This document shows positions 149 to 60,782 of a stretch of DNA of 64,000 nt, in pieces. The notes below the pieces were generated by a model. The model saw only the letters and a program-made list of their open reading frames with translations, ran no database searches and was not told the origin of the DNA. Numbering within the stretch: the stretch's first letter is position 1; the number at the start of each line of letters is the position of its first letter. A program made the translations under genes and the position numbers. This DNA comes from Macrostomum lignano (Eukaryota), in assembly GCA_002269645.1 (NCBI GenBank), contig NIVC01000364.1:587471-651470 (forward strand), read 5' to 3'.

Positions 149-320
149 CATGTTTGGGCGCAACCTATGGATTCACTCGGCTATTTCTATTGGCAACACA
201 CACATATAAGTCGCTATTGGACAGAATAGTAGTCACGTGACTGCTCTCAGCCAATAGCGACTTACATGTGTGTGTTGCCAATAGAAACGGCTGGGTGATT
301 CCCAAGGTTGCGCATGTATG
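149..320. mobile_element. Palindromic MITE-like element (172 bp) with 8-bp target-site duplication CCAACTCC
   Basis: Nearly the whole element is an imperfect inverted repeat centred on GTCACGTGAC (232-241). It begins CAT and ends ATG. CCAACTCC flanks it at 141-148 and 321-328. Confidence 0.7.
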
Positions 321-661
321 CCAACTCCCCTGAGCAGGCATACAAGTAGGCAGATATGCATATATTATGACTTGTATTTACACTTTGCTGTGCATTGGGG
401 GATTGGCTTTCAATGACATTAATTGCATATATATAAATATTTAATAAATAACATAAATATATAAATAAATATAATAAATATATAAATACAATTCATAAGC
501 CTTAGTTAGTCAAGAATTATATTTGTGTATATTTTGAACATAGTATATATGCATGTATTAAAATAAAAACTAAGGACTACATTTTCATAATTGATAGTCG
601 TGAACAATATGAATCTGTCAAAACTTAGAATTAAGTGCACAACATTCATTTCTGTTCATTC

Positions 662-795
662 CTGAAGGAATATAAAGTAGTCGTGTTGGGCAGCGGCGGG
701 GTTGGCAAGAGCGCCCTGACTGTTAAGTTTGTGTCCGGCAATTTTGTTGAGAAATATGATCCAACTATTGAGGACTTCTACAAGAAGCAGATCAC
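662..795 (+). CDS. rap2: Rap2-like small GTPase, coding exon 1 (start unresolved: CTG at 662 or splice acceptor at 667/668)
   Basis: Missed by the ORF track. Translates (L)[44 protein letters not shown], with the G1 P-loop and the Ras/Rap effector loop YDPTIED. Donor GTGAGT at 796 is phase 2, and AC|T gives Thr in frame with exon 2. Confidence 0.9.
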
Positions 796-1037
796 GTGAG
801 TTGACAATAAATTAATTGTGACGCAGTTCCACTGTTAATAAAGCTGAGTTATTTAGGGTCGCATGGAAGGGGCTTGAGGTTTCTACCACTGTGCTATGCT
901 ATCCATTGAGCCAGCAAATCACGCAAGACTGATGTTATCACAGCTGGCATCAAGCTACATGTAGGTTTTGAACTTTTAGAGTCTTATTGTTAATTAGTCT
1001 TAAAGCTTATTAATGCCACAGCATTTCAGAAATTCAG

Positions 1038-2792
1038 GCCTTGACATCTCAACAATTCCCCCATTATGAGCCTTGACATCTCAGCAATTCCCCCCATTAT
1101 GAGCCTTGACATCTCAGCAATTCCCCCATTATGAGCCTTGACATCTCAGCAATTCCCCCCTATTATGAGCCTTGACATCTCAGCAATTCTCCCATTATGA
1201 GCCTTGACATCTCAGCAATTCCCCCAATATGAGCCTTGACATCTCAGCAATTCCCCCCATTATGAGCCTTGACATCTCAGCAATTCCCCCAATATGAGCC
1301 TTGACATCTCAGCAATTCCCCCAATATGAGCCTTGACATCTCAGCAATTCCCCCATTATGAGCCTTGACATCTCAGCAATTCCCCCATTATGAGCCTTGA
1401 CATCTCAGCAATTCCCCCATTATGAGCCTTGACATCTCAGCAATTCCCCCCATTATGAGCCTTGACATCTCAGCAATTCCCCCCATTATGAGCCTTGACA
1501 TCTCAGCAATTCCCCCCATTATGAGCCTTGACATCTCAGCAATTCCCCCATATGAGCCTTGACATCTCAACAATTCCCCCATTATGAGCCTTGACATCTC
1601 AGCAATTCCCCCATTATGAGCCTTGACATCTCAGCAATTCCCCCCTATTATGAGCCTTGACATCTCAGCAATTCCCCCTATTATGAGCCTTGACATCTCA
1701 GCAATTCCCCATTATGAGCCTTGACATCTCAGCAATTCCCCCATTATGAGCCTTGACATCTCAGCAATTCCCCCATTATGAGCCTTGACATCTCAGCAAT
1801 TCCCCCATTATGAGCCTTGACATCTCAGCAATTCCCCCATTATGAGCCTTGACATCTCAGCAATTCCCCCCTATTATGAGCCTTGACATCTCAGCAATTC
1901 TCCCATTATGAGCCTTGACATCTCAGCAATTCCCCCAATATGAGCCTTGACGTCTCAGCAATTCCCCATATTATGAGCCTTGACATCTCAGCAATTCCCC
2001 CCTATTATGAGCCTTGACATCTCAGCAATTCTCCCATTATGAGCCTTGACATCTCAGCAATTCCCCCAATATGAGCCTTGACATCTCAGCAATTCCCCCA
2101 TTATGAGCCTTGACATCTCAGCAATTCCCCCAATATGAGCCTTGACATCTCAGCAATTCCCCCCTATTATGAGCCTTGACATCTCAGCAATTCCCCCATT
2201 ATGAGCCTTGACATCTCAACAATTCCCCCCTATTATGAGCCTTGACATCTCAGCAATTCCCCCTATTATGAGCCTTGACATCTCAGCAATTCCCCATTAT
2301 GAGCCTTGACATCTCAGCAATTCCCCCATTATGAGCCTTGACATCTCAGCAATTCCCCCATTATGAGCCTTGACATCTCAGCAATTCCCCCAATATGAGC
2401 CTTGACGTCTCAGCAATTCCCCATATTATGAGCCTTGACATCTCAGCAATTCCCCCAATATGAGCCTTGACATCTCAGCAATTCCCCCATTATGAGCCTT
2501 GACATCTCAGCAATTCCCCCCATTATGAGCCTTGACATCTCAGCAATTCCCCCATTATGAGCCTTGACATCTCAGCAATTCCCCCATTATGAGCCTTGAC
2601 ATCTCAGCAATTCCCCCATTATGAGCCTTGACATCTCAGCAATTCCCCCCATTATGAGCCTTGACATCTCAGCAATTCCCCCCATTATGAGCCTTGACAT
2701 CTCAGCAATTTCCCCATTTTGAGCCTTGACATCTCAGCAATTGCCCCCATTATGAGCCTTGACATCTCAGCAATTCCCCCATTTTGAGCCTT
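1038..2792. repeat. Minisatellite, about 32-bp unit ATTATGAGCCTTGACATCTCAGCAATTCCCCC, about 55 copies, in the Rap2 intron
   Basis: Tandem units with variable C-run length, read directly. Confidence 0.95.
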
Positions 2793-2891
2793 GAGTTTTG
2801 AGCCTCACTGTATAGTTGCGCAAGACAGCCGGCCACCCAGCCACCCAAATGCTGATAATAAGGCAATTTATACCTGCCTCACTCTCCCCAG

Positions 2892-3306
2892 TGTTGACCA
2901 GCAGCCGGCAGTGCTGGAGATTCTGGACACGGCTGGCACGGAGCAGTTCGCCTCAATGCGCGATTTATACATAAAAAATGGCCAAGGCTTTGTTGTAGTC
3001 TTCAGCGTAACATCCATGCAGACGTTTCAAGATATACAGCAGTTGCGCGATCAGATTAACCGAGTCAAAGGCCAATCCAACAGTCCCATTGTGCTGGTTG
3101 GCAACAAGGCCGACCTGGCCGATTATCGTCAGGTAGCGCCGGACATGGGCGAGAGTCTCAGCCGAGCCTGGTCGTGTCCTTACCTGGAGGCCTCGGCCAA
3201 GACTGGCTACAACATTGAGGAGGTATTCCGCGTGGCCGTCGGCGAGATGAGCGCCGTAGCCAAGGCCAGGTCTGGTGGATCCGGATGCTGCTGCGCCATT
3301 CTCTGA
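2892..3306 (+). CDS. rap2: Rap2-like small GTPase, coding exon 2
   Basis: Acceptor ctctccccAG at 2890-2891. Contains LEILDTAGTEQFASMRDLYIKNGQGF (DTAGTE with the Rap-type Thr61), NKAD and EASAK motifs, and C-terminal CCCAIL CaaX box. Spliced product is about 181-182 aa. Confidence 0.93.
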
Positions 3307-3386
3307 CTGACTCTCGTGCACTCCCGTGTCTGCCTGTGCCCGCGTTGCTATGAGCTTCTTCTAGAGTGATGTAGATTATGTTTACA

Positions 3387-3692
3387 ATCGCACCTGAAGC
3401 ATTTGAGGGTGGTGTTTAGCATCGCACCTGAAGCACCTAAGGGTAGTGTTTAGCATCGCACCTGAAGTATCTGAGGGTGGTGTTTAGCATCGCACCTGAA
3501 GCACCTAAGGGTAGTGTTTAGCATCGCACCTGATGTACCTGAGGGTGGTGTTTAGCATCGCACCTGAAGCACCTGAGGGTAGTGTTTAGCATCGCACCTG
3601 AAGTACCTGAGGGTGGTGTTTAGCATCGCACCTGGTGTTTAGCATCGCACCTGAAGTATCATGGGGTGGTGTTTAGCATCGCACTTAAAGTA
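3387..3692. repeat. Minisatellite, 34-bp unit GGTGGTGTTTAGCATCGCACCTGAAGCACCTGAG, about 9 copies, just after the Rap2 stop
   Basis: TAGCATCGCAC recurs at 34-bp spacing (3417, 3451, 3485...). Confidence 0.9.
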
Positions 3693-4502
3693 CATGCTGA
3701 TCTAAATATAGATTTTTGTCTTTAGAGTGGATAGTGAGTCAAAAGTCAGTGTGCACCGCATGCAAGAAAACGTTTCAATATTGAAATTGCACAGCGTTCC
3801 ACCCTAAGCCGCATGCGCGGCAGACCGACGGTCTTTTATGCTTAAAAATGAAGCGAGCCAAGATTTGACTGGTTCGAGAGACTTGAAGCTAGTTGCTAGG
3901 GCAGTATGGCGTCAGAAAATTTCCTTCACCTGTAAGACAATCCTAACGTTGCGTGCGCATTTGATCCAGGGGCTTAAGAAGGAGCCTTGTTTGTAACTCG
4001 ATTACATTAGTACGCTTTAATTGAGTGAGTCAGTGCGACAGAATGTCTATTTCATATAATGCACTATGAGTGTACAAATAGTATTAGAATTTTTCAAGGT
4101 GCGCACATTTTCCTTAGTCATTCTATTGGAAGCTCTGATGTGCAAGAATTTCCACTGTTGTAAACGTATGTGCCTTTTAAAATTATCAAGAGTAGTACCG
4201 CTTTATAAATATCTGCCTGTCTGTCTATCAAAGCTATAGGTTGAAGCCTTCCATTCCCAAAATTGTTGGTCAAATAATTACATAATCACGTTGCATGCAT
4301 GCCTTGATTTGCTTTGTTTTATTAAATTAGTAAACTTTAATATTCATTTATGTCAGTTTGCTATCGTATAATAATGCCCTTTTACTCAATTATGTTAACC
4401 GGAGTTTCTCTCTTTTTAAGGGAGACATCCTCCAGACGATATCACGATTGGAGAATAATTAGGCTTCTGTGTTCTGTTTAGGTATGTCATGTCTCCACCA
4501 CC

Positions 4503-6297: not shown

Positions 6298-6870
6298 CCT
6301 GGGGCCGATTCTAGCGCCCTCTGACACCTATTCTAGCGCCCCTGACACCTATTCTAGCGCCCCTGACACCTATTCTGGCGCTCCCCTGACACCTATTCTG
6401 GCGCCCCCTGACAACCTATTCTGGCGCCCCCTGACACCTATTCTGGCGCCCCCGACAACCTATTCTAGCGCCCCCTGACAACCGATTCTGGCGCTCCCCT
6501 GACACCTATTCTGATGTTCCCCTGACAACCTATTCTGGCGCCCCCTGACACCTATTCTGGCGCTTCCCTGACAACCGACTCTGGCGCTCCCCTGACACCT
6601 ATTCTGGCGCCCCTGACAACCTATTCTGGCGCCCCCGACAACCTATTCTGGCGCCCCCTGACAACCGACTCTGGCGCTCCCCTGACAACCGATTCTGGCG
6701 ACCCCTGACACAACCTTGCACATGCGCCCCCTAGCGCCGATTCTAGCGCCCCCTAACGTCGATTCTAGAGCCCCCTAGCGCCAATTCTAGCGCCCCCTAG
6801 CGCCGATTCTAGCGCCCCCTTAGGTCGATTCTAGAGCCCCCTAGCGCCGATTCTAGCGCCCCCTGACAGT
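6298..6870. repeat. Degenerate minisatellite, about 21-23-bp unit CTGACACCTATTCTGGCGCCCC
   Basis: Direct tandem repeat. Confidence 0.9.
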
Positions 6871-8015: not shown

Positions 8016-10270
8016 ATCTGACACCCATTCTGCCATCTCCTGACACCCATTCTGGCAACTCCTGACACCCATTCTGGCATCTCCTGACACCCATTCTGGC
8101 AACTCCTGACACCCATTCTGGCATCTCCTGACACCAATTCTGGCATCTCCTGACACCCATTCTGGCAACTCCTGACACCCATTCTGCCATCTCCTGACAC
8201 CCATTCTGGCATCTCCTGACACCCATTCTGGCATCTCCTGACACCAATTCTGGCATCTCCTGACACCCATTCTGGCATCTCTTGACACCCATTCTGGCAT
8301 CTCCTGACACCCATTCTGGCATCTCCTGACACCAATTCTGGCATCTCCTGACACCCATTCTGGCATCTCTTGACACCCATTCTGCCATCTCCTGACACCC
8401 ATTCTGGCATCTCCTGACACCCATTCTGGCATCTCCTGACACCCATTCTGGCATCTCCTGACACTCATTCTGGCATCTCCTGACACCCATTCTGGCGACT
8501 CCTGACACCCATTCTGCCATCTCCTGACACCCATTCTGGCATCTCTTGACACCCATTCTGGCATCTGACACCCATTCTGGCATCTCCTGACACCCATCCT
8601 GGCGTCTCCTGACACCCATTCTGGCGACTCCTGACACCTATTCTGCCATCTCGTGACACTTATTCTGGCGACTCCTGACACCCATTCTGCCATTTCCTGA
8701 CACTTATTCTGGCATCTTCTGACACCCATTCTGGCATCTCCTGACACCCATTCTGGCATCTCCTGACACCCATTCTGCCATTTCCTGACACTTATTCTGG
8801 CATCTTCTGACACCCATTCTGGCATCTCCTGACACCCATTCTGGCATCTCCTGACACCCATTCTGGCATCTCCTGACACCCATTCTGGCATCTCCTGACA
8901 CCCATTCTGGCATCTCTTGACACACATTCTGGCATCTCCTGACACCCATTCTGGCGACTCCTGACACCCATTCTGGCATCTCCTGACACTCATTCTGGCA
9001 TCTCCTGACACCCATTCTGGCGACTCTTGACACCCATTCTGCCATTTCCTGACACTTATTCTGGCATCTTCTGACACCTATTCTGGCGACTCCTGACACC
9101 TAGTCTGGCGACTCCTGACACTTATTCTGGCATCTTCTGACACCCATTCTGGCATCTCCTGACACCCATTCTGGCGACTCCTGACACTTATTCTGGCATC
9201 TCCTGACACCCATTCTGCCATCTCCTGACGCTTATTCTGGCGACTCCTGACACCCATTCTGGCATCTCCTGACACCCATTCTGGCGACTCCTGACACCCA
9301 TTCTGGCGACTCCTGACACCCATTCTGGCATCTCCTGACACCCATTCTGGCGACTCCTGACACCCATTCTGGCATCTCCTGACACCCATTCTGGCATCTC
9401 CTGACACCCATTCTGGCATCTCCTGACACCCATTCTGGCATCTTCTGACACCCATTCTGGCGACTCCTGACACCCATTCTGGCATCTCCTGACACCCATT
9501 CTGGCATCTCCTGACACCCATTCTGGCATCTCCTGACACCCATTCTGGCATCTCTTGACACCCATTCTGGCATCTCCTGACACCCATTCTGGCGACTCCT
9601 GACACCCATTCTGGCATCTCCTGACACCCATTCTGGCATCTCCTGACACCCATTCTGGCATCTCTTGACACCCATTCTGGCATCTGACACCCATTCTGGC
9701 ATCTCCTGACACCCATTCTGGCGTCTCCTGACACCCATTCTGGCGACTCCTGACATCCATTCTGGCGACCCCTGACCTGACACCCATTCTGGCGACTCCT
9801 GACACCTATTCTGCCATCTCGTGACACTTATTCTGGCGACTCCTGACACCCATTCTGGCGACTCTTGACACCCATTCTGCCATTTCCTGACACTTATTCT
9901 GGCGACTCTCGACGCCTATTCTGGTGACTCCTGACACCCATTCTGGCCACTCCTGACGCCTATTCTGGTGACTCCTGACACCCATTCTGGCAACTCCTGA
10001 CACCCATTCTGGCCACTCCTGACACCCATTCTGGCGACTCCTGACACCCATTCTGGTGACTCCTGACACCCATTCTGGCGACTCCTGACACCCATTCTGG
10101 CGCCTCCGGACACCCATTCTGGCGTCTCTTGACGCCTATTCTGGTGACTCCTGACACCCATTCTGGCCACTCCTGACGCCTATTCTGGTGACTCCTGACA
10201 ACCATTCTGGCGACTCCTGACGCCTATTCTGGTGACTCCTGACACCCATTCTGGCGACTCCTGACACCAA
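8016..10270. repeat. Minisatellite, 22-bp unit CTGACACCCATTCTGGCATCTC, about 100 copies
   Basis: Direct tandem repeat; source of the many minus-strand MGVRRCQNGCQEMPEW ORFs. Confidence 0.95.
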
Positions 10271-10849
10271 TTTTGCCAGATTCTCGAGCTACCTCAAATT
10301 CCATTGATTCAGGAAACAAATAGTTAATCTGATTATTATATGGAAATCGCGAGTTACTATTACTACTGCTAGCATCTGTTAAGTTTTTTTGACCCTTACT
10401 CTCGATGTGATGTCACTCCCGAATGGAAAGATTGTTCCAATAATGGACCAGTAGGTCTTTTCTTACAATGAAGAATTTCTTTCTAAAGGCTAAAATAAAT
10501 GAAGTGTGAATTGCGAATTGCTTTGTTGGCCAACACCGAAGGCCTGAGTTGCTATCCCTGCATGTCCTATAGGCTCATTCGGGCTTCGGTCAGTTCTATA
10601 GTTGCCAGGCGGGGTCTTAAGGATTCCGCAAAAAACTTCAGTACGGATGATCAGCGATGCGCGATACAGAGGGTCAAGCATGACGACTGGAGCTCATTGT
10701 GTCCCAGTATTTGATCCTGATCTTAACTCTGTCTATATGCGCCTGGCCCTTGTTGATTGCGCAACTTGAGCTCGATTTTTCTTGTCCTATGTGTCAGACA
10801 GTGGCCGTGCCTTCTGTAGGCACTACCAACCTAGTTCTTGTCCCTTACC

Positions 10850-34330: not shown

Positions 34331-35166
34331 TCAGAGGCCTGTGAATTAGAAAACACTTCAAGAAGTCTCTAGTAAGTTTCCAGAACAGGTCAAGGTTGAG
34401 GCTGAATGTTGTCAACACACCTCGAAAGGAAAGCGATCACATCTTCTAACTGAAATAATTGCTTCGGGGCATTTATTTGCTGCTATTAACTTGATTACCT
34501 TACCGCCTCCGCCCTCAGCCATCTTTCTCGATACTCAGCTTGATTAAACCGAAAATCCAGTCCGTATCCCCTACTACCTGTAATCCCCCCACTCGATGCA
34601 ACTATTACTTTTTACTCACAGAAAATCCGCCTCGAGGCGGCTATAGGAGAAAATGAAAGATTTCGTCAACACAAAGAAATGCTCGCGGTCATTGAGCACA
34701 GGCGCTGGCTGCATCAGGCCGAATCCATCACTGACCACCTGAGTGCCGCGTTCAATGGAATGCTCAGATTCATGAGCATACTTGACTGCTCTATAGGGGG
34801 GGGGGGGAGGCCAATCCGACCTTTCAGAGCGCCCGACACGCGACCCCCCCCCAGCCTCTCGCGTGGATGCGAAAGAATTTTATTTGGCTACAAAGGGGCG
34901 CGCCTGTCTGTATAGAGAATAATCCCAGCGGATTGAAGGTCTGCTTTGAATGCTGCAGATTAAAACAAAACGGCGCGGCCCCCCACCCGCCGGGCTCGCC
35001 GAGCCGAGAGAATTCGAGAGGGGGCGGCTGCGGCTCCCCGCTGCTTGTTGGCCCACCTGGGGCAGCTGCTCAGACACGAAAGGCAGTGCGTGTAACACAA
35101 CTGAACTCAACCCATTAGCGCCATTTTCTCAAGCCCGAACGCAACCCCATCGGATTAACTTTGCAG

Positions 35167-36110
35167 CCCCTGTGCGCAAGCAGCGGCGCGAGAGGACCAC
35201 CTTCACCAGGGCGCAGCTGCAGATCCTGGAGGAGCTGTTCGGCAAGACCAAGTACCCGGACATCTTCATGCGCGAGGAGGTGGCGCTGCGGATCAACCTG
35301 CCGGAGTCGCGGGTGCAGGTCTGGTTCAAGAACCGCCGGGCCAAGCAGCGCCAGCAGCAGAAGCAGAAGGAGGCCGGCGAGAAGGCCGCCCACTGCGGCG
35401 TGTCGGCCGCCTCCGCCGGACAGCCGGTCGGACACGCCGGACACGCTGGACACGCCGGACATGCCGGACACGCCGGACACGCCGGACACGGAGCGAAGGC
35501 CGTCTCCGTCTCGGCTTCCGCCGCGCCGCTGGCCGGAGGCTCCGCACTCGCCGCCGCCACCGCTGCCGCTGCGGCCGCTGCCGCCAACATCGGCGGCGGA
35601 GGCGGCGGCGCCGGCATCGACATGACCGGCTGCCTCCACGACGCCGGCGGTGGCGCTGTCAAGTGCGAGGACGTCGACTCGAGCAGCCCGTCGCCCGCCA
35701 AGACGCTCAGCCTGCCCGGCTCGGCCGAGGCCTCCAAGCGCAGCCCCGCCGTCTCCGCCAACGGCCACGCCGCCGCCGCGGCTGCCGCTGCCGCGCACTT
35801 CCTCACCGACTCTACCGGACACTCCGGCGCCGCCGGCTGGGGCGCCTCGGCCGCCGGACGCCTCGCCGGACCCAACAGCCCGACTGACGGCGGCTCCGCC
35901 TACGCCACCTGCGTTCAGCAGCAGCACCGCAGCGCTGCCGCAGCCGCAGCCGCCGCGGCCGCTGCCGCTGCCTACCACAACCAGACCTACGGACAGTACA
36001 GCGCTACAGGCTACCCTCCGTATGACTACCTGCGACCTGCTGCCTACCCGCAGCAGCCGCCAGACTATGACTATCAGGGCTGGTCATCGCGCAAGCTGCA
36101 GCTGCTGTAG
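35167..36110 (+). CDS. otx: Otx homeobox gene copy A, coding exon 2 (homeodomain and C-terminus)
   Basis: Acceptor tttgcAG at 35165-35166. Encodes [57 protein letters not shown], a PRD-class K50 Otx-type homeodomain. C-terminus WSSRKLQLL resembles the Otx tail WKFQVL. Stop TAG. Confidence 0.95.
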
Positions 36111-38108: not shown

Positions 38109-39052
38109 TCACAGCAGCTGCAGCTTGCGCGATGACCAGCCCTGATAGTCATAGTCTGGCGGCTGCTGCGGGTAGGCAGCAGGTCGCAGGTAGTCATACG
38201 GAGGGTAGCCTGTAGCGCTGTACTGTCCGTAGGTCTGGTTGTGGTAGGCAGCGGCAGCGGCCGCGGCGGCTGCGGCTGCGGCAGCGCTGCGGTGCTGCTG
38301 CTGAACGCAGGTGGCGTAGGCGGAGCCGCCGTCAGTCGGGCTGTTGGGTCCGGCGAGGCGTCCGGCGGCCGAGGCGCCCCAGCCGGCGGCGCCGGAGTGT
38401 CCGGTAGAGTCGGTGAGGAAGTGCGCGGCAGCGGCAGCCGCGGCGGCGGCGTGGCCGTTGGCGGAGACGGCGGGGCTGCGCTTGGAGGCCTCGGCCGAGC
38501 CGGGCAGGCTGAGCGTCTTGGCGGGCGACGGGCTGCTCGAGTCGACGTCCTCGCACTTGACAGCGCCACCGCCGGCGTCGTGGAGGCAGCCGGTCATGTC
38601 GATGCCGGCGCCGCCGCCTCCGCCGCCGATGTTGGCGGCAGCGGCCGCAGCGGCAGCGGTGGCGGCGGCGAGTGCGGAGCCTCCGGCCAGCGGCGCGGCG
38701 GAAGCCGAGACGGAGACGGCCTTCGCTCCGTGTCCGGCGTGTCCGGCGTGTCCGGCATGTCCGGCGTGTCCAGCGTGTCCGGCGTGTCCGACCGGCTGTC
38801 CGGCGGAGGCGGCCGACACGCCGCAGTGGGCGGCCTTCTCGCCGGCCTCCTTCTGCTTCTGCTGCTGGCGCTGCTTGGCCCGGCGGTTCTTGAACCAGAC
38901 CTGCACCCGCGACTCCGGCAGGTTGATCCGCAGCGCCACCTCCTCGCGCATGAAGATGTCCGGGTACTTGGTCTTGCCGAACAGCTCCTCCAGGATCTGC
39001 AGCTGCGCCCTGGTAAAGGTGGTCCTCTCGCGCCGCTGCTTGCGCACAGGGG
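38109..39052 (-). CDS. otx: Otx homeobox gene copy B, coding exon 2
   Basis: Acceptor atttgcAG at 39054-39053. Same translation as copy A exon 2. Stop TGA. Confidence 0.95.
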
Positions 39053-39126
39053 CTGCAAATTGGAAAATGAAAACTTAGAGAAACTCGAGTTCGTCCTATG
39101 AATAGTGTGACAGAGTTCAGTCTTAC

Positions 39127-45738: not shown

Positions 45739-46147
45739 CGTAGATTTGTTGCTGGACGTGCCGAAATGAGTAACAGAAAATGAAATTCTGACCAATTTTA
45801 ATAGTATATAGATATAATAGAAAGAGTTTTAGCAGGCCAATACCTACCTGACTAGTCCGCTATCATGGGGCGCATTGTGCCGGTCTGTAACTACAGACAC
45901 AATGCCTCATTTGCATAATCAGGCTCTGTTTGCCTAAATGGGCCATTGTCAGAAAATTTACATTCCGTTTATTTACTGCCAGCATATTGACCCAAGCGAT
46001 GAGAGTGCGATGTTCATTGCTGCAGTCTGGATGGCTTTTTATAGTCTTTTTCCAGACGCATTCTTTTTTTTGAGAAAATCAAGAGTTCACAGAAAAGACT
46101 TGGGTGCTGAGCTGTTCAAGTGAAGCTGAGTAAAACCGTGTTTTAAT

Positions 46148-49100
46148 TCTAGTCTGAGCATCTGGGAGAATTCTAGTCTGAGGATCTGGGAGAATTCTAG
46201 TCCGAGGATCTGGGAGAATTCTAGTTTGAGGATCTGGGAGAATTCTAGTCTGAGCATCTGGGAGAACTCTAGTCTGAGCATCTGGGAGAATTCTAGTCTG
46301 AGGATCTGGGAGAATTCTAGTTTGAGGATCTGGGAGAATTCTAGTCTGAGCATCTGGGAGAACTCTAGTCTGAGCATCTGGGAGAATTCTAGTCTGAGGA
46401 TCTGGGAGAACTCTAGTCTGAGGATCTGGGAGAATTCTAGTCTGAGGATCTGGGAGAATTCTAGTCTGAGGATCTGGGAGAATTCTAGTTTGAGGATCTG
46501 GGAGAATTCTAGTCTGAGCATCTGGGAGAACTCTAGTCTGAGCATCTGGGAGAATTCTAGTCTGAGGATCTGGGAGAATTCTAGTTTGAGCATCTGGTAG
46601 AATTCTAGTCTGAGCATCTGGGTGAACTCTAGATTGAGCATCTGGGAGAATTCTAGTCTGAGGATCTGGGAGAATTCTAGTCTGAGGATCTGGGAGAACT
46701 CTAGTCTGAGGATCTGGGAGAATTCTAGTCTGAGGATCTGGGAGAATTCTAGTTTGAGGATCTGGGAGAACTCTAGTCTGAGGATCTGGGAGAATTCTAG
46801 TCTGAGCATCTGGGTGAACTCTAGATTGAGCATCTGGGAGAATTCTAGTCTGAGGATCTGGGAGAATTCTAGTCTGAGGATCTGGGAGAATTCTAGTCTG
46901 AGGATCTGGGAGAATTCTAGTCTGAGGATCTGGGAGAATTCTAGTCTGAGGATCTGGGAGAATTCTAGTCTGAGGATCTGGGAGAACTCTAGTCTGAGGA
47001 TCTGGGAGAATTCTAGTCTGAGCATCTGGGTGAACTCTAGATTGAGCATCTGGGAGAATTCTAGTCTGAGGATCTGGGAGAATTCTAGTCTGAGGATCTG
47101 GGAGAATTCTAGTCTGAGGATCTGGGAGAATTCTAGTCTGAGGATCTGGGAGAATTCTAGTCTGAGGATCTGGGAGAATTCTAGTCTGAGGATCTGGGAG
47201 AATTCTAGTCTGAGGATCTGGGAGAATTCTAGTCTGAGGATCTGGGAGAATTCTAGTCTGAGGATCTGGGAGAATTCTAGTCTGAGGATCTGGGAGAATT
47301 CTAGTTTGAGGATCTGGGAGAATTCTAGTCTGAGCATCTGGGAGAACTCTAGTCTGAGGATCTGGGAGAATTCTAGTCTGAGGATCTGGGAGAATTCTAG
47401 TCTGAGGATCTGGGAGAATTCTAGTCTGAGGATCTGGGAGAATTCTAGTCTGAGGATCTGGGAGAATTCTAGTCTGAGGATCTGGGAGAATTCTAGTCTG
47501 AGGATCTGGGAGAATTCTAGTCTGAGGATCTGGGAGAATTCTAGTCTGAGGATCTGGGAGAATTCTAGTCTGAGGATCTGGGAGAATTCTAGTTTGAGGA
47601 TCTGGAAGAATTCTAGTCTGAGCATCTGGGAGAACTCTAGATTGAGCATCTGGGAGAATTCTAGTTTGAGGATCTGGGAGAATTCTATTCCGAGGATCTG
47701 GGAGAACTCTAGTCTGAGGATCTGGAAGAATTCTAGTCTGAGCATCTGGGAGAACTCTAGATTGAGCATCTGGGAGAATTCTAGTCTGAGGATCTGGGAG
47801 AATTCTAGTCTGAGGATCTGGGAGAACTCTAGTCTGAGGATCTGGGAGAACTCTAGTCTGAGCATCTGGGAGAACTCTAGTCTGAGGATCTGGGAGAATT
47901 CTAGTTTGAGGATCTGGTAGAATTCTAGTCTGAGCATCTGGGAGAACTCTAGTCTGAGGATCTGGGAGAATTCTAGTCTGAGCATCTGGGAGAATTCTAG
48001 TCTGAGCATCTGGGAGAATTCTAGTCTGAGGATCTGGGAGAATTCTAGTCTGAGGATCTGGGAGAATTCTAGTCTGAGGATCTGGGAGAATTCTAATCTG
48101 AGGATCTGGGAGAACTCTAGTCTAAGGATCTGGGAGAATTCTAGTTTGAGGATCTGGTAGAATTCTAGTTTGAGGATCTGGGAGAATTCTAGTTTGAGGA
48201 TCTGGGAGAATTCTAGTTTGAGGATCTGGGAGAATTCTAGTTTGAGGATCTGGGAGAATTCTAGTTTGAGGATCTGGGAGAATTCTAGTCTGAGGATCTG
48301 GGAGAATTCTAGTTTGAGGATCTGGGAGAATTCTAGTCTGAGCATCTGGGAGAACTCTAGTTTGAGCATCTGGGAGAATTCTAGTCTGAGGATCTGGGAG
48401 AATTCTAGTTTGAGGATCTGGGAGAATTCTAGTCTGAGGATCTGGGAGAATTCTAGTTTGAGGATCTGGGAGAATTCTAGTTTGAGGATCTGGGAGAATT
48501 CTAGTCTGAGCATCTGGGAGAACTCTAGTTTGAGCATCTGGGAGAATTCTAGTCTGAGGATCTGGGAGAATTCTAGTTTGAGGATCTGGAAGAATTCTAG
48601 TCTGAGCATCTGGGAGAACTCTAGTTTGAGCATCTGGGAGAATTCTAGTCTGAGGATCTGGGAGAATTCTAGTTTGAGGATCTGGAAGAATTCTAGTCTG
48701 AGGATCTGGGAGAATTCTAGTCTGAGCATCTGGGAGAATTCTGGTCTGAGGATCTGGAAGAATTCTAGTCTGAGCATCTGGGAGAACTCTAGTTTGAGCA
48801 TCTGGGAGAATTCTAGTCTGAGGATCTGGGAGAATTCTAGTTTGAGGATCTGGAAGAATTCTAGTCTGAGCATCTGGGAGAACTCTAGTTTGAGCATCTG
48901 GGAGAATTCTAGTCTGAGGATCTGGGAGAATTCTAGTTTGAGGATCTGGAAGAATTCTAGTCTGAGCATCTGGGAGAACTCTAGTTTGAGCATCTGGGAG
49001 AATTCTAGTCTGAGGATCTGGGAGAATTCTAGTCTGAGGATCTGGGAGAATTCTAGTCTGAGGATCTGGGAGAATTCTAGTTTGAGGATCTGGAAGAATT

Positions 49101-50092
49101 CTAGTCTGAGCATATGGGAGAACTCTAGTTTGAGCATCTGGGAGAATTCTAGTCTGAGGATCTGGGAGAATTCTAGTCTGAGGATCTGGGAGAATTCTAG
49201 TTTGAGCATCTGGGAGAATTCTAGTCTGAGGATCTGGGAGAATTCTAGTCTGAGGATCTGGGAGAATTCTAGTCTGAGGATCTGGGAGAACTCTAGTCTG
49301 AGGATCTGGGAGAACTCTAGTCTGAGCATCTGGGAGAACTCTAGTCTGAGCATCTGGGAGAATTCTAGTCTGAGCATCTGGGAGAATTCTAGTCTGAGGA
49401 TCTGGGAGAATTCTAGTCTGAGGATCTGGGAGAATTCTAGTCTGAGGATCTGGGAGAATTCTAGTCTGAGGATCTGGGAGAATTCTAGTCTGAGCATCTG
49501 GGAGAATTCTAGTCTGAGGATCTGGGAGAATTCTAGTCTGAGGATCTGGGAGAATTCTAGTCTGAGGATCTGGGAGAACTCTAGTCTGAGGATCTGGGAG
49601 AATTCTAGTCTGAGGATCTGGGAGAATTCTAGTTTGAGGATCTGGAAGAATTCTAGTCTGAGCATCTGGGAGAACTCTAGTCTGAGGATCTGGGAGAATT
49701 CTAGTCTGAGGATCTGGGAGAATTCTAGTCTGAGGATCTGGGAGAATTCTAGTCTGAGGATCTGGGAGAATTCTAGTCTGAGCATCTGGGAGAATTCTAG
49801 TCTGAGGATCTGGGAGAATTCTAGTCTGAGGATCTGGGAGAATTCTAGTCTGAGGATCTGGGAGAACTCTAGTCTGAGGATCTGGGAGAATTCTAGTCTG
49901 AGGATCTGGGAGAATTCTAGTTTGAGGATCTAGAATTCTAGAGCATCTGGGAGAATTCTAGTTGAGCATCTGGGAGAATTCTAGTTGAGGATCTGGTAGA
50001 ATTCTAGTCTGAGCATCTGGGTGAACTCTAGATTGAGCATCTGGGAGAATTCTAGTCTGAGGATCTGGGAGAATTCTAGTCTGAGGATCTGG
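46148..50092. repeat. Large 24-bp satellite array CTAGTCTGAGGATCTGGGAGAATT, about 160 copies
   Basis: Exact 24-bp period; it produces the 1232-aa ILRLEFSQ ORF. Confidence 0.97.
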
Positions 50093-55657: not shown

Positions 55658-56189
55658 CTGTGGGAATTGCCGCAAACGGTTAATATTACTAATACTATTA
55701 AAATTATTATTATTATACATTATTAGCTAAAGTTACTGAATTATTGTGGACATGGCGGGCCGCTGACAGAGCAAGTAAAAGGGCAAAGAAAGTTCAAATG
55801 AGCTTTGAAAATTTCATTGTTGAAAAAAGCAGTTGCAATGGCAGACACCCAAGCCGTGGAATGGGGCATTCGAAGTTAAAACCCAAATTTGAAGTCTCAA
55901 GGCCACAGAGAACTTCATTTATAGTATATACCATAGAAATGGATCTTATACTTAAGTATTGCGATTAAATATATTTTTTCGTCTATGTCCATAGACTACT
56001 GACGATTAGTTTTCAGTAGTGCAAGCGAACATTTTTTGTCCCCGAGTCATTATTGGGTGTCATTTTCTATGCATTGTCTGAATGGGGAGTGGCCTATCTA
56101 GTGTATATAAGATCTATAATCTATCCTACAATAAAGTGCTAAAAATTAGTATAGAGGAAACCAAATAAAAAATATTAAGCAACACTTAC

Positions 56190-57539
56190 TTGTAGCAAAT
56201 AAGCAGACTGATTATTGACATAGCCTGGTGGCTGAAATCCATAGTGCTGCTGCTGCTGCTGCTGTTGCTGAGAAGACGGTGTCGGCACGCCGCCAAATTG
56301 CGGCGGACCAAACTGCCCACCTGTTGAGTAGAGAGCGCCAGCAGTTTGACTGTACAGAGCCGAGAACTGCTGCTGCTGCTGCTGTTGAGGTTGATGTTGC
56401 TGCTGCAGAAATGGATATTGTTGCTGCTGCGAAAATGAATATTGCTGTTGCTGCTCCGGCATAGGCTGGTAGCCAGTTGAATTGGCTACAGAAGCTAGTT
56501 GAGGAGTACTCATCGAGTATTGCATCCCGCCAAAGTGTTGCTGCTGCTGATTGTGAGCTAGAAATCCGCCGCCTCCACTAGAAGCAGCAGCAGCAGCAGC
56601 GGTATTCTGCTGACCATACAAAGCCATGATAGAATCTTTCATAGATTTCTTTGGAGCAGCGGCGGTGTTCGCAGAATTAGAAGAATCGCTGGCAAACAGG
56701 TCGGCAGCAGTGGCGGTCGTGGCGCTGCCCTCGCTTAAGAATGCCAAATCGTTGGCGTGCGAGCTGGCGACTCCGCCACCGCCACCGCCGCCGCCGCCGC
56801 TAGAGAAGTCGCCAAATCCGTCATCGGCCAGACCGCCAAGCAGATCTGGCGGCGGCTGCTGCGGCACTGCTGAAGGAGGTGCCGGCTGCTGTGGCTGCTG
56901 CGGGGGCGGTTGCTCAGGCTTTGATTGAGACGCAGCCTGCGGCGGAGGCTTCACTGCCGCGGTGGTGTTGCCAGCAGAGCGCCTGGCTGGCGCGGGCGCG
57001 GGCGCCGGCAGCTTCGGCGACACGCCGTCAGCGGCGGCAGAGTTAGCAGCGGCGGCAGCTCGTCGCTGAGCAGTGTTGGTCTTGAGCAGATCGTACACAG
57101 CAGCTGGATCGGGTTTAGGCAGCACCCAGTCCCTGGCTAAGTAGCGCTTCTCCTCATACTTAGCCTTGATGAACTGCTCAAGCGTGGCGTCCGTCTGCGG
57201 CCGACGGAATCCATCCGGCACGTTGGCCTCGTAGGCGGCTCTGGCTAGCGAGTTACCAATAGCGGCCACCCCAGCCACCTGTTCGGCTGTCCAGGAGTCC
57301 AAGTTGACAGATTTCACTCGCGAGATGTGCACGCCCAGCTTCCTGTGGATGCCGGCGCATCTGATGCAGAGGAATACGCCAATGTTCCAGCTGGCCCAGC
57401 GGGGACTTTTAGCATCGCAGTCAGCGCAGTACTTATTGTCCTCGTCTCTTAGCAGCATGCCCAGCACGTCCTGGAGTAGGTCCTTCTCGCTCTTTGCAGC
57501 TGCCAGCTTGCCAGAGCGGTGTCCAGTGCTGGATGACAT
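56190..57539 (-). CDS. smap: Stromal membrane-associated protein (SMAP1/2-like ArfGAP), exon 1
   Basis: ArfGAP zinc finger CADC-x16-[32 protein letters not shown] and [14 protein letters not shown]. Later [13 protein letters not shown] motif typical of SMAP. Donor CAA|GTAAGT at 56189. Spliced protein is 494 aa. Confidence 0.93.
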
Positions 57540-58194: not shown

Positions 58195-60221
58195 TTATCA
58201 AGCAATATAAACTTAAAGTCGCTTTTATTAGAAACACAGGTTATAAACAACGTGGATTATGTAAAAAGTGAATTAAAAAATTTGTAGGCCCCCTACTCAA
58301 AGTTTTTAAGTATATTAGATCAAGATAAATTGAGCAAACAAGTGTTAGCAAAGTAAACAAAGTAAACAAAACAGAGTGCAAAAAGTATATGTGCACTTCT
58401 TTTCTAAAAGACTCAGAGTAAATGGCCTACACCACCATGCACCAGCTAAGTATTTTATATTCAAATCAATATAGGCCTATTCAATTCAAATATAAATTAT
58501 AAGCCCCCTACCAATGACAAAGTTATCAAATCAAACTAAATATAGTAACTAACAATAGTATTAGGCCTAATGTATAATGTTGTATGTTGTATTTATTAAT
58601 TTTTAAATATAACTAGGGCATGAGATATTTAGACAATCTATTTGTCTTGTCTTAGTCTGGGTTTTATGCCTACTAATTTGCTTTGTTAATGCTCATTGTG
58701 CTGGCACAGTGATAGTAACAAAAGAAATAATTTTGTATTAATTAACAACTCTTCAAAAGAGCACAAATAAAGGCTCTCCTGATCCTAGAGCAAGCAAAAG
58801 TCAACTAAAAATGTAAGAATAACTTAATAAGATATGTCGTCATAACTGACTAAAGTCCCTAGGCCGCCTAGCTCTAGGGCCTCGGCTTAAATAGTGATGA
58901 CACTAAATCTGCAAAACAAAAATCATTAGATTTTTTATTTTTTTCACGTTTGAGTCACCAGTCACACAATCATTATTAATATTGGTAAATGAGAAATGTG
59001 ATATATTTTTGTGATGATTTCGTGATACTCTCATTTCTATAGATTTCAAGGACTACTTAAGTCATCCTTGATAAATAAATTTCTTTCGGGCTGCTTTACA
59101 CTTTTTTAAACAAAACATGTTAAACGAATTGCAAAATTAGACTTAAAAGTAAATTCAGCTATTCCTTACGCTTATTTATCACTTTTAAATTTAAAAAGCT
59201 TCACTACCTTTGATAAAACATTGTTTACAGAAAGTATCAATGTTGCTTTTAATTTATTATTGATTTTATAATAATTCCAGTGACTATTCAATATTCGAGA
59301 TTTTGTTGTGATCTGTTTGATCAAAAACACATAGTACATGCATGAGTGTTAAGACAGCGAAAGGTGCTTTTTTGTAGTAAATCAGCTGCAATAATAGCAA
59401 TGAAGCTTACGTTAGCTAAATCTTGTTTGCATGGATTCCTGCCTCCTGCGCAGCGCACTATACGGCACTAGCATTATATATTTCAATGTTATAAATAATT
59501 TTCACCAAACAATTAGTTAATTATTTTTGAGCTTTAGAATAAATCATGTATCTTATTTCAAATTCTTATCTTAATGGATATTAGAGGTAGGTAGAAAGCT
59601 TAGAATTTTAGCAAAATTTTCTTTTTAGTCACACAGTTATGTAGTCAAGTTAAGCAGTGTGCTTATGTGCCTTTAGTTTGTTAATTTGTCAGTAGCTAGA
59701 TGCACGTTTTAAGGACCGTTTCTTTCTATACAGTCACAGAAATAGAAAAATGAGTATTAAATGAATAAATCGCTTTACTTTTTGATTTATCATATTGGCC
59801 TACCTATCATAAACCACTTGCTTTATGAATTTTAAATGATGCCTTTCTGGTATATCTAAATTGTTAAATGTTCTAAACACATAAAATATACTTCTCCACG
59901 AAATTAATTTTGAACCTAATTTTAACTTCAATATCATGGCCCAGTTGTTCCATTTTTTCTCTAGACTTTCTCTACTTTTCTACAACTTATAAACAAAGTT
60001 TACTTAAGAGTAAAAATAAGTTGTGCTTGTTTAATAACTCTTGATAAATATTTCCCTATTTTCTATATCTTTTTGAAGTCGAAGACCTACTTTATCAATA
60101 ATTGTTTTCAATAATAAATAAACATTCTAGTTTTTTACTGTAAGTAATCCAAACATTTTTTCTTTCCAGTCGCCATAGTTTCAAGGCTTCAACAACCAAA
60201 ATTATCATTCAAGGCTTGGCA

Positions 60222-60584
60222 ATGTCTGGTGAAAACAAAGACAATGGTGACCCCTACTACTGCTCGGAGCAGATTCAGATCCCGCCCCCATTGCCAGACA
60301 TCCTGAAGCAATTCACCAAATCTGCAATCCGCACCCAGCCGCCAGATGTGCTGGCTTGGGCAGCCGCTTACTTCCGTGCCATGGCCGACGGTGAAACTCC
60401 GCCAGTGAAGGAGCGCCTTGAGATGGCAACCGCAACGCAGAAGACGGACACCGGTCTCACTCCCGGTCTGCTCCGAGTGCTCAACAAGCAGCTGGGCCCA
60501 AAGAAGCAAGTTGAAGTAAGCGACATCACAGAAAAATGGAAGGCGCTAAATCTGCCGGAAGAGCGTCTGCAGGAACTGTTCCAG
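60222..60584 (+). CDS. ropn1l: Ropporin-1-like protein (RIIa-type docking domain), coding exon 1
   Basis: QIQIPPPLPDILKQFTKSAIRTQPPDVLAWAAAYF and PVKERLEMATATQKTDTGLT match the ROPN1/ROPN1L family. Phase-0 donor CAG|GTGAAT at 60585. Confidence 0.92.
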
Positions 60585-60782
60585 GTGAATACTGAATGCC
60601 ATTCAGGGTGCAATCAGCGTATTTTTGTGATATTCGTTTTAGATAGCGAATCCTTTATTAAAATACAGTATGCATACATTGTACCACCAGGAATGTGCTC
60701 TTAGCGGCTCGATAGTTCTAGCACAGTCCGCTCCGTTCAGCGGGTCAAAAATATTTTTATGACAGGCTGTTTTTTAGAGGAA

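What the first reader, a model, noticed from the sequence alone, without database searches (positions are those of the whole stretch)
632..700. Rap2 has no genomic ATG; the AUG of a flatworm spliced leader would complete the ORF in frame
Seen: CTG (662) sits where Met1 should be, with an in-frame TAA at 632 and no ATG between. A pyrimidine tract ends in AG at 666-667 directly before GAA TAT AAA GTA. Known: flatworm spliced leaders end in AUG, and in schistosomes this can act as the initiator. Inference: trans-splicing at 667/668 gives M-E-Y-K-V-V-V-L-G, nearly the canonical Rap/Ras N-terminus. An ancestral ATG AAG GAA may have decayed to CTG AAG GAA once the leader supplied Met. Alternatives are CUG initiation, an unseen upstream cis exon, or a base-call error.
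Basis: partly seen in the sequence, partly recalled or inferred. Interest (0 to 1): 0.75.

Follow-up and report, generated by a model that had tools for sequence, protein, structure and literature searches.

The report
Flatworm Rap2 gene borrows leader's AUG
This Macrostomum lignano Rap2 GTPase gene has no start codon of its own and almost certainly takes its AUG from the trans-spliced leader, a known flatworm mechanism, while the odd CTG at the Met position is most likely an assembly error.

Summary
The window is Macrostomum lignano, assembly Mlig_3_7, contig NIVC01000364.1. In detail: TAA at 632, CTG at 662, AAG at 665, and no in-frame ATG before a Rap2 open reading frame. This species' 35-nt spliced leader ends in ATG. 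GenBank annotates the gene as 5'-partial, starting at Lys (AAG, 665), in all three genomic copies and in both copies of a paralogue. That fits a leader junction at 664/665. The leader AUG followed by AAG GAA gives MKEYK, the normal Rap N-terminus.

The triplet before AAG differs between copies: CAG (a consensus TTNCAG acceptor), CTG (this window) and ATG. Each change moves toward the leader's last bases, ...CATG. A neighbouring, unrelated TauD-like gene shows the same thing: TTTTGCAG| in one contig and TTTGCATG| (the leader's last 7 nt) in the other. Mlig_3_7 was polished with Pilon using RNA-seq reads, and models from the older ML2 assembly read CAG.

So T663 is most likely a polishing artefact, and the true acceptor is CAG. 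The mechanism has been known since 2006, so interest is modest.

The parts
632..634 (+). In-frame TAA stop in the outron. It closes the reading frame 30 nt upstream of the Met1 position.
645..661 (+). Pyrimidine-rich tract (TTCATTTCTGTTCATTC) upstream of the acceptor.
   Evidence: nearly invariant among the three copies
659..664 (+). Trans-splice acceptor hexamer. It reads TTCCTG here, CTCCAG in copy L002 and TTCATG in copy L003. The inferred true sequence is TTCCAG, matching the published M. lignano SL acceptor motif [T/C]TNCAG. T663 is the suspected polishing error.
665..795 (+). Coding exon 1, which is the annotated 5' end of the mRNA. It runs AAG GAA TAT AAA ... and encodes [16 protein letters not shown] (P-loop) through ...KKQI-T. 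The donor is AC|GTGAGT.
666..667 (+). Distal AG of a CAG-AAG (NAGNAG-type) tandem acceptor. At best it is a minor or fallback site and would give MEYK.
   Evidence: inference
796..2891 (+). Intron (GT...AG) carrying a 32-nt minisatellite of about 54 copies at 1038-2794. Intron length is 2096, 1359 and 800 nt in the three copies.
2892..3306 (+). Coding exon 2, running (T)VDQQPAVLEILDTAGTEQF...GCCCAIL plus stop TGA at 3304-3306.

Best explanation
Positions 665-3306 are a two-exon Rap2-type small GTPase gene of Macrostomum lignano whose initiator codon is not in the genome. The pre-mRNA is trans-spliced. The outron (including TAA 632 and the pyrimidine tract) is removed, and the 35-nt spliced leader ...UUAUUGCAUG is joined at 664/665, directly before AAG (Lys2). 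The leader's terminal AUG then starts the reading frame as [10 protein letters not shown]. This is the only way to make a protein that keeps the P-loop. The triplet at 662-664 is not a former start codon. It is the acceptor's CAG. The T at 663 in this contig (and the ATG in a sister contig) most likely arose when Mlig_3_7 was polished with RNA-seq reads. Reads that still carried the last few leader bases (...CATG) overwrote the bases just upstream of the junction. What is shown: the sequence, the copies, the annotation and the published methods. What is inferred: the junction position, use of the leader AUG, and the artefact.
For: (1) Species and leader. The protein is 100% identical to M. lignano entries. 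The SL is CGGTCTCTTACTGCGAAGACTCAATTTATTGCATG, and 30% of genes are trans-spliced at a [T/C]TNCAG motif (PMC8629364). The Macrostomum SL's final ATG is described as a translation start codon (PMC10468722).
(2) Annotation. GenBank proteins for all three copies (PAA53978, PAA73421, PAA84711) and both paralogue copies are 'partial' and start at KEYK. 5' ends in that annotation were set from SL-trimmed reads (PMC5730564).
(3) Acceptor. Copies L002 and L005 read CTCCAG|AAG and TTGCAG|AAG, consensus acceptors exactly at that boundary.
(4) Protein. SL-AUG plus AAG GAA gives MKEYK, the same N-terminus and length as orthologues (P0007 is MKEYK, P0005 is MREYK). The Pfam Ras domain starts at residue 4. 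The next Met is after the P-loop.
(5) Conservation. The 546-nt CDS is identical in the three copies, while flanks differ by 0.7-3.5%.
(6) Artefact. Across 7 acceptor sites in 3 genes, 4 sites carry changes within -5..-1, and 8 of 8 substitutions go to the SL base: CAG to CTG to ATG, and TTTTGCAG to TTTGCATG at the unrelated TauD-like gene. [quoted passage not shown] It was built from the same PacBio reads as ML2. The UniProt models that I attribute to ML2 (my own knowledge) read CSFQK, i.e. TTC CAG.
Against: No RNA or DNA reads could be inspected, so the junction and the true base at 663 are inferred. SL-trimmed reads map equally to all three identical exons, so the annotation cannot show which copies are expressed or spliced where. 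The polishing settings needed to confine the imprint to 1-4 bases (forced end-to-end alignment, few mismatches, or partial SL trimming) are not stated in the paper. The cis-splice sites of the same gene show no imprint. That is expected, but it is not a positive control. Only 3 genes and 7 sites were sampled. Attribution of the A0A1I8... UniProt entries to ML2 rests on my knowledge.
Confidence: 0.7

Rival explanations
1. CTG is a real allele of this copy. With the proximal CAG lost, the spliceosome uses the next AG (666-667), 3 nt downstream. The leader AUG stays in frame and the protein starts M-E-Y-K, one residue shorter.
For: AG at 666-667 follows an intact pyrimidine tract and lies 3 nt from the consensus site, so the frame is kept. 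The CDS of this copy is intact and identical to its sisters. DV1 carries extra chromosome copies, so several haplotypes could exist.
Against: The same A-to-T change appears at the paralogue. A four-base change to the leader's 3' end appears at an unrelated gene on the same contig as the paralogue's CTG. Both point to a technical cause. A at -3 departs from the [T/C]TNCAG motif. The annotation starts at AAG, not GAA. The ML2 models show CAG on the TTC haplotype.
Confidence: 0.15
2. CTG is real and this copy is a translationally dead or weakened duplicate. A recent acceptor mutation is tolerated because two or more intact copies exist in this polyploid line.
For: There is redundancy: three copies with identical coding sequence. 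Loss of the AG at the annotated junction.
Against: The arguments for an artefact above apply here too. There are no other disabling changes. A usable in-frame AG lies 3 nt downstream.
Confidence: 0.05
3. Translation starts without the leader AUG, either at the CUG at 662 as a near-cognate initiator on an unspliced or differently spliced mRNA, or at an ATG in an unseen upstream cis-spliced exon.
For: CUG is the most efficient near-cognate codon (general knowledge). One old fused gene model (P0123) splices far-upstream exons onto |KEYK.
Against: The annotated mRNA begins at 665, so the CUG is not in it. The N-terminal 173 aa of P0123 are not encoded in the window or within 3 kb upstream of any copy. 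No other gene is annotated within 10 kb. The triplet varies (CAG, CTG, ATG) while everything downstream is invariant.
Confidence: 0.03
4. The leader-like bases are really in the DNA. [quoted passage not shown] In one copy (L003) this created a genuine genomic ATG.
For: The changes are directional toward the SL sequence at three genes. A published note reports a full SL sequence lying at the 5' end of a protein-coding gene in the assembly.
Against: Introns are retained in all affected copies, so conversion tracts would have to be only 1-4 nt long. A documented technical cause exists. ML2 shows CAG.
Confidence: 0.03

Closest known systems
[quoted passage not shown]
   Same: The leader ends in AUG. 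It is joined in frame directly to an ORF that has no AUG of its own. The leader supplies Met1 of a conserved protein.
   Different: This is a different flatworm lineage (free-living Macrostomorpha) and a different gene. Here there is no transcript or translation evidence, only annotation, sequence and comparison of copies.
slORFs (ORFs created by SL addition; slORFfinder, PMC9851317)
   Same: The concept is the same: the start codon is contributed by the SL.
   Different: slORFfinder calls rest on SL-containing reads and ribosome footprints. Neither was available here.
NAGNAG tandem acceptors (single-codon alternative 3' splice sites; my own knowledge)
   Same: The inferred true sequence CAG|AAG| offers two AGs 3 nt apart. 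Using the distal one would drop Lys2 and keep the frame.
   Different: This is a trans-splice acceptor, and use of the distal site is untested. In the window as assembled only the distal AG exists.
Polishing or reference artefacts from non-genomic read ends (adapter, poly(A) or leader bases forced into alignments)
   Same: Bases next to an RNA-only junction are overwritten by the sequence on the other side of the junction. It happens in some near-identical copies and not in others.
   Different: I found no published description of spliced-leader imprinting at acceptor sites in Mlig_3_7. The attribution rests on the stated Pilon plus RNA-seq polishing and on 4 of 7 sites seen here.

Membership tests
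SL-AUG-initiated mRNA (flatworm type) | The organism has a spliced leader ending in AUG. | tested here: met
   The organism was identified as M. lignano. The SL sequence ends ...TTGCATG (PMC8629364).
SL-AUG-initiated mRNA (flatworm type) | A trans-splice acceptor lies immediately 5' of the first genomic codon. | tested here: inconclusive
   Sister copies have consensus CTCCAG| and TTGCAG| at 664/665. The window itself reads TTCCTG|, judged to be an assembly error. An AG also lies 3 nt downstream.
SL-AUG-initiated mRNA (flatworm type) | Transcripts carry the SL joined at that site. | not testable with these tools
   No reads were accessible. The evidence is indirect: the annotated 5'-partial CDS starts at 665 in all copies, the annotation method is based on SL reads, and leader-like bases sit at the junction.
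SL-AUG-initiated mRNA (flatworm type) | The SL AUG is in frame with the ORF, and no other AUG can give the full protein. | tested here: met
   AUG plus AAG GAA... reads through to the stop at 3304. TAA at 632 closes the frame upstream. The next Met lies after the P-loop.
SL-AUG-initiated mRNA (flatworm type) | Translation starts at the SL AUG. | not testable with these tools
   This needs N-terminal proteomics, ribosome profiling or a reporter.
Rap2 subfamily of Ras GTPases | Ras-family GTPase domain with a P-loop. | tested here: met
   Pfam PF00071, E = 3e-54, residues 4-163. GSGGVGKS and DTAGTE motifs are visible.
Rap2 subfamily of Ras GTPases | Closest relatives are Rap2 proteins, and the effector region is Rap2-type (Phe in YDPTIEDFY; my own knowledge). 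| tested here: met
   Named hits are mostly Rap-2a, Rap-2b and Rap-2c-like at about 61-70% identity. [11 protein letters not shown] is present.
Rap2 subfamily of Ras GTPases | C-terminal CAAX box. | tested here: met
   The protein ends ...GCCCAIL.
Non-AUG (CUG) initiation | The CUG is present in the mature mRNA. | tested here: not met
   The annotated mRNA/CDS begins at 665, downstream of the CTG. The triplet is CAG or ATG in other copies.

The most novel reading that the evidence does not exclude
The leader-like bases at acceptor sites (TG, ATG, TTGCATG) are real DNA. They would have been written into some gene copies by RNA-templated repair from trans-spliced mRNA. The leader's AUG would then be in the process of being captured into the genome, and copy L003 would already have a genomic ATG.
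Probability: 0.04. Interest if true: 0.8.

Novelty: new member of a known kind. Interest (0 to 1): 0.3.

Why it matters
The biology is a clean example, not a new principle. A conserved signalling GTPase in a free-living model flatworm depends on the spliced leader for its start codon, in two paralogues. This explains why these genes are filed as "partial" in GenBank. It also explains why older models start at an internal Met and lose the P-loop. The practical point may matter more. In Mlig_3_7, bases just upstream of trans-splice sites can be overwritten by leader sequence. That destroys AG acceptors and can create false ATGs. This would bias acceptor-motif statistics: only 44% of sites showed TTNCAG in PMC8629364. 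It would also affect gene-start prediction, promoter and outron design for transgenes, and variant calls between homeologous copies.

Tried and rejected
The 90% cluster holds no Logan or ENA members, so no raw-read assemblies of this species were reachable.
- Other Rap2 transcripts: the closest non-Macrostomum ones (P0005, P0007) have 5' UTRs of about 770-980 nt and tell us nothing about leaders.
- Upstream cis exon: the N-terminal part of the fused model P0123 is not in the window or within 3 kb upstream of any copy. No gene is annotated within 10 kb either side.
- Leader suffixes in the window: I scanned for exact leader suffixes of 6 nt or more. I counted eight 7-mer matches, against roughly 8 expected by my rough estimate, so there is no enrichment at that length.
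- Poly(A)-tail imprints in 3' regions: two suggestive spots, but no poly(A) signal nearby, so this is left open.
- ArfGAP ORF look-up, meant to reach more annotated sequence: not on record.
- Literature: no paper mentions this gene or this artefact. Wasik 2015 is not held.
- The bacterial promoter/terminator scan is irrelevant for this eukaryote.

Full report
**What is in the window.**
- TAA at 632-634.
- No ATG in frame after it.
- A pyrimidine-rich tract.
- CTG at 662-664, AAG at 665-667, then GAA TAT AAA GTA GTC...

Human RAP2A aligns to 662-793 and 2893-3297. The gene has two coding exons. Exon 1 is 665-795 with donor AC|GTGAGT. Exon 2 is 2892-3306, ending ...GCCCAIL and TGA. They are separated by a 2096-nt intron filled with a 32-nt minisatellite. 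Pfam gives a Ras domain from residue 4. Most of the named hits are Rap-2a/b/c-like proteins at about 61-70% identity.

**Where it comes from.** The protein is 100% identical to Macrostomum lignano entries. The window matches GenBank contig NIVC01000364.1 of assembly Mlig_3_7 (GCA_002269645.1) at 6306 of 6306 bases compared. M. lignano has a single 35-nt spliced leader, CGGTCTCTTACTGCGAAGACTCAATTTATTGCATG. About 30% of its genes receive it. The top motif at trans-splice acceptors is [T/C]TNCAG (PMC8629364). All reported flatworm leaders end in AUG. In Schistosoma mansoni this AUG is in frame with 28% of trans-spliced mRNAs and is required by more than 40 cDNAs (Cheng et al. 2006, as summarised in PMC9851317 and PMC12582326). 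A Macrostomum genome paper calls the leader's final ATG a translation start codon (PMC10468722).

**Evidence that the leader supplies Met1.**
- GenBank lists this protein three times (PAA53978, PAA73421, PAA84711), as 'partial', 181 aa, starting KEYK. The two copies of a 77%-identical paralogue are also 'partial' and start KEYK.
- In that annotation, 5' ends were set from RNA-seq reads that carried the leader, which was trimmed before mapping (PMC5730564).
- A 5'-partial CDS starting exactly at AAG means the mRNA body starts at 665. If it started further upstream, the open frame would have been extended toward TAA 632.
- Copy L002 reads CTCCAG|AAG and paralogue copy L005 reads TTGCAG|AAG. Both are consensus acceptors at exactly that boundary.
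- Leader AUG plus AAG GAA TAT AAA gives MKEYK. This has the same length and almost the same residues as orthologues (MKEYK in P0007, MREYK in P0005).
- The next Met is after the P-loop. Older models of the paralogue that start there are 114-aa stumps.
- No other gene is annotated within 10 kb. The upstream exons of one old fused model are not found in the window or within 3 kb upstream of any copy.

**What the CTG is.** The three copies of this gene differ at that triplet:

| Copy | Contig | Sequence at the junction |
|---|---|---|
| L002 | NIVC01002991 | CAG\|AAG |
| L001 (this window) | NIVC01000364 | CTG\|AAG |
| L003 | NIVC01001013 | ATG\|AAG |

The paralogue has CAG (L005) and CTG (L004). 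Everything from AAG to the stop, 546 nt, is identical in the three copies. The flanks differ by 0.7-3.5%.

Counting back from the junction, the leader ends ...G C A T G. So CAG to CTG puts the leader base at -2. CTG to ATG also puts the leader base at -3.

I then checked the next annotated gene beside the paralogue, a TauD/GBBH-like gene on the other strand, which is also 5'-partial. In contig NIVC01000291 its start is preceded by ...CTGATTTTGCAG|CC, a consensus acceptor. In contig NIVC01000939 the same place reads ...CTGATTTGCATG|CC. There the acceptor is replaced by the last 7 bases of the leader.

Over the 7 acceptor sites of these 3 genes, 4 carry changes within 5 nt of the junction. All 8 substitutions go to the leader's base. 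Direction alone has a chance of about (1/3)^8.

**Why I read this as an artefact.**
- The Mlig_3_7 paper states that the Canu assembly 'was polished with Pilon v. [quoted passage not shown] The same paper used STAR with EndToEnd alignment for transcript mapping.
- Reads that begin with the last few leader bases, if forced to align end to end, place T, A, C, G over the bases upstream of the acceptor. Where RNA reads outnumber DNA reads, Pilon would write those bases in.
- This predicts what is seen. Changes are confined to the last few bases. They are graded from the junction outward. They appear in some near-identical copies and not others. They leave introns and coding sequence untouched.
- Mlig_3_7 and the older ML2 assembly were built from the same PacBio reads of line DV1. 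The UniProt models that I attribute to ML2 (from my own knowledge of the accession series) read CSFQKEYK, that is TGT TCA TTC CAG AAG. This is the flank of this window's copy, but with CAG. None reads L or M at that position.
- A real biological cause, conversion by cDNA, would need tracts of 1-4 nt that leave the introns in place. That is far less likely.

**Consequences for the finding.** The heading is right: there is no genomic ATG, and the leader's AUG completes the frame. The details change:
- The junction is most likely 664/665, not 667/668.
- The protein starts MKEYK, not MEYK.
- The CTG is not a decayed ATG but the acceptor CAG with one wrong base.
- The ATG in the sister contig, which at first sight supports 'ancestral ATG', is two wrong bases.

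The next AG is 3 nt downstream and keeps the frame (a CAG-AAG tandem acceptor). I give that about 15%.

**What is not shown.** I could not see any reads. Trans-splicing at this gene, the exact junction, the true base at 663 and translation from the leader AUG are all inferred. The polishing settings that would limit the imprint to a few bases are not given in the paper. Only three genes were sampled.

**Novelty and interest.** Leader-supplied start codons in flatworms have been known since 2006, and the possibility is acknowledged for Macrostomum. So this is a new example of a known kind. I found no description of the leader imprint at acceptor sites of a widely used assembly. It would be useful to its users, but it is a technical point.

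Noticed in passing
L012:17405-17411 (-) versus L013:18493-18500 (-): A TauD/GBBH-like gene lies next to the Rap2 paralogue. One contig has the acceptor TTTTGCAG|. The other has TTTGCATG|, the leader's last 7 nt. Here the leader AUG is out of frame and would open a 7-codon upstream ORF ending just before the gene's own ATG.
   Followed up: yes
L004:2998-3000 versus L005:2998-3000; L003:2998-3000: The Rap2 paralogue shows the same CTG/CAG difference between its two contigs. A sister copy of the window's gene reads ATG at this triplet. That could be mistaken for a genuine genomic start codon.
   Followed up: yes
window 3759-3772 (-): On the minus strand, in the Rap2 3' region, TTGCATG|CGGTGCAC matches the leader's last 7 nt in all three copies. 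The three bases that differ between copies (3768, 3769, 3772) are leader-like in two copies. This may be the imprinted acceptor of an unannotated antisense trans-spliced RNA, or it may be chance.
   Followed up: partly
window 35160-36108 and 38111-39059: A 949-nt inverted repeat, 100% complementary with a 2002-nt spacer, duplicates the homeodomain exon of an Otx-like homeobox gene (Pfam Homeodomain hit). Perfect identity suggests a very recent inverted duplication or a palindromic assembly error.
   Followed up: partly
window 1038-2794, 8018-10272, 46145-50092 and many others: The window is packed with long minisatellites, with units of 17-52 nt and up to about 165 copies. The one in the Rap2 intron and a 34-nt one in its 3' UTR (3379-3696) vary in copy number between the three gene copies.
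   Followed up: partly
window 158-313: An inverted repeat has 63-nt arms (87% complementary) around a 30-nt spacer containing CACGTG. The arms carry ATTGG/CCAAT motifs. It lies about 350-500 nt upstream of the acceptor and could be a promoter element or a small transposon.
   Followed up: no
L012 about 12,540 versus L013 (Rap2 paralogue 3' region): Adjacent substitutions turn ...TTTCATGATC into ...TTTCAAAATC. This could be a poly(A)-tail imprint from the same RNA-based polishing. No poly(A) signal was seen nearby. The similar GC-to-AA change at window 3768-3769 is the site described in the 3759-3772 item above.
   Followed up: partly
window 56178-57539 (-) and 60216-60704 (+): A single-ORF ArfGAP-domain gene of 454 aa is present, but its exact product is not on record in the collection. 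A further ORF at 60216-60704 has no Pfam hit, and I take it, by eye only, to be ropporin/RIIa-like. Candidate acceptors upstream of both (CCTGCAG|, TTTCCAG|) keep their AG.
   Followed up: partly
proteins P0125, P0126, P0123: Older gene models of these Rap2 genes either start at an internal Met, giving 114 aa without the P-loop, or are fused to unrelated distant exons (472 aa). Both errors follow from the missing genomic ATG.
   Followed up: partly
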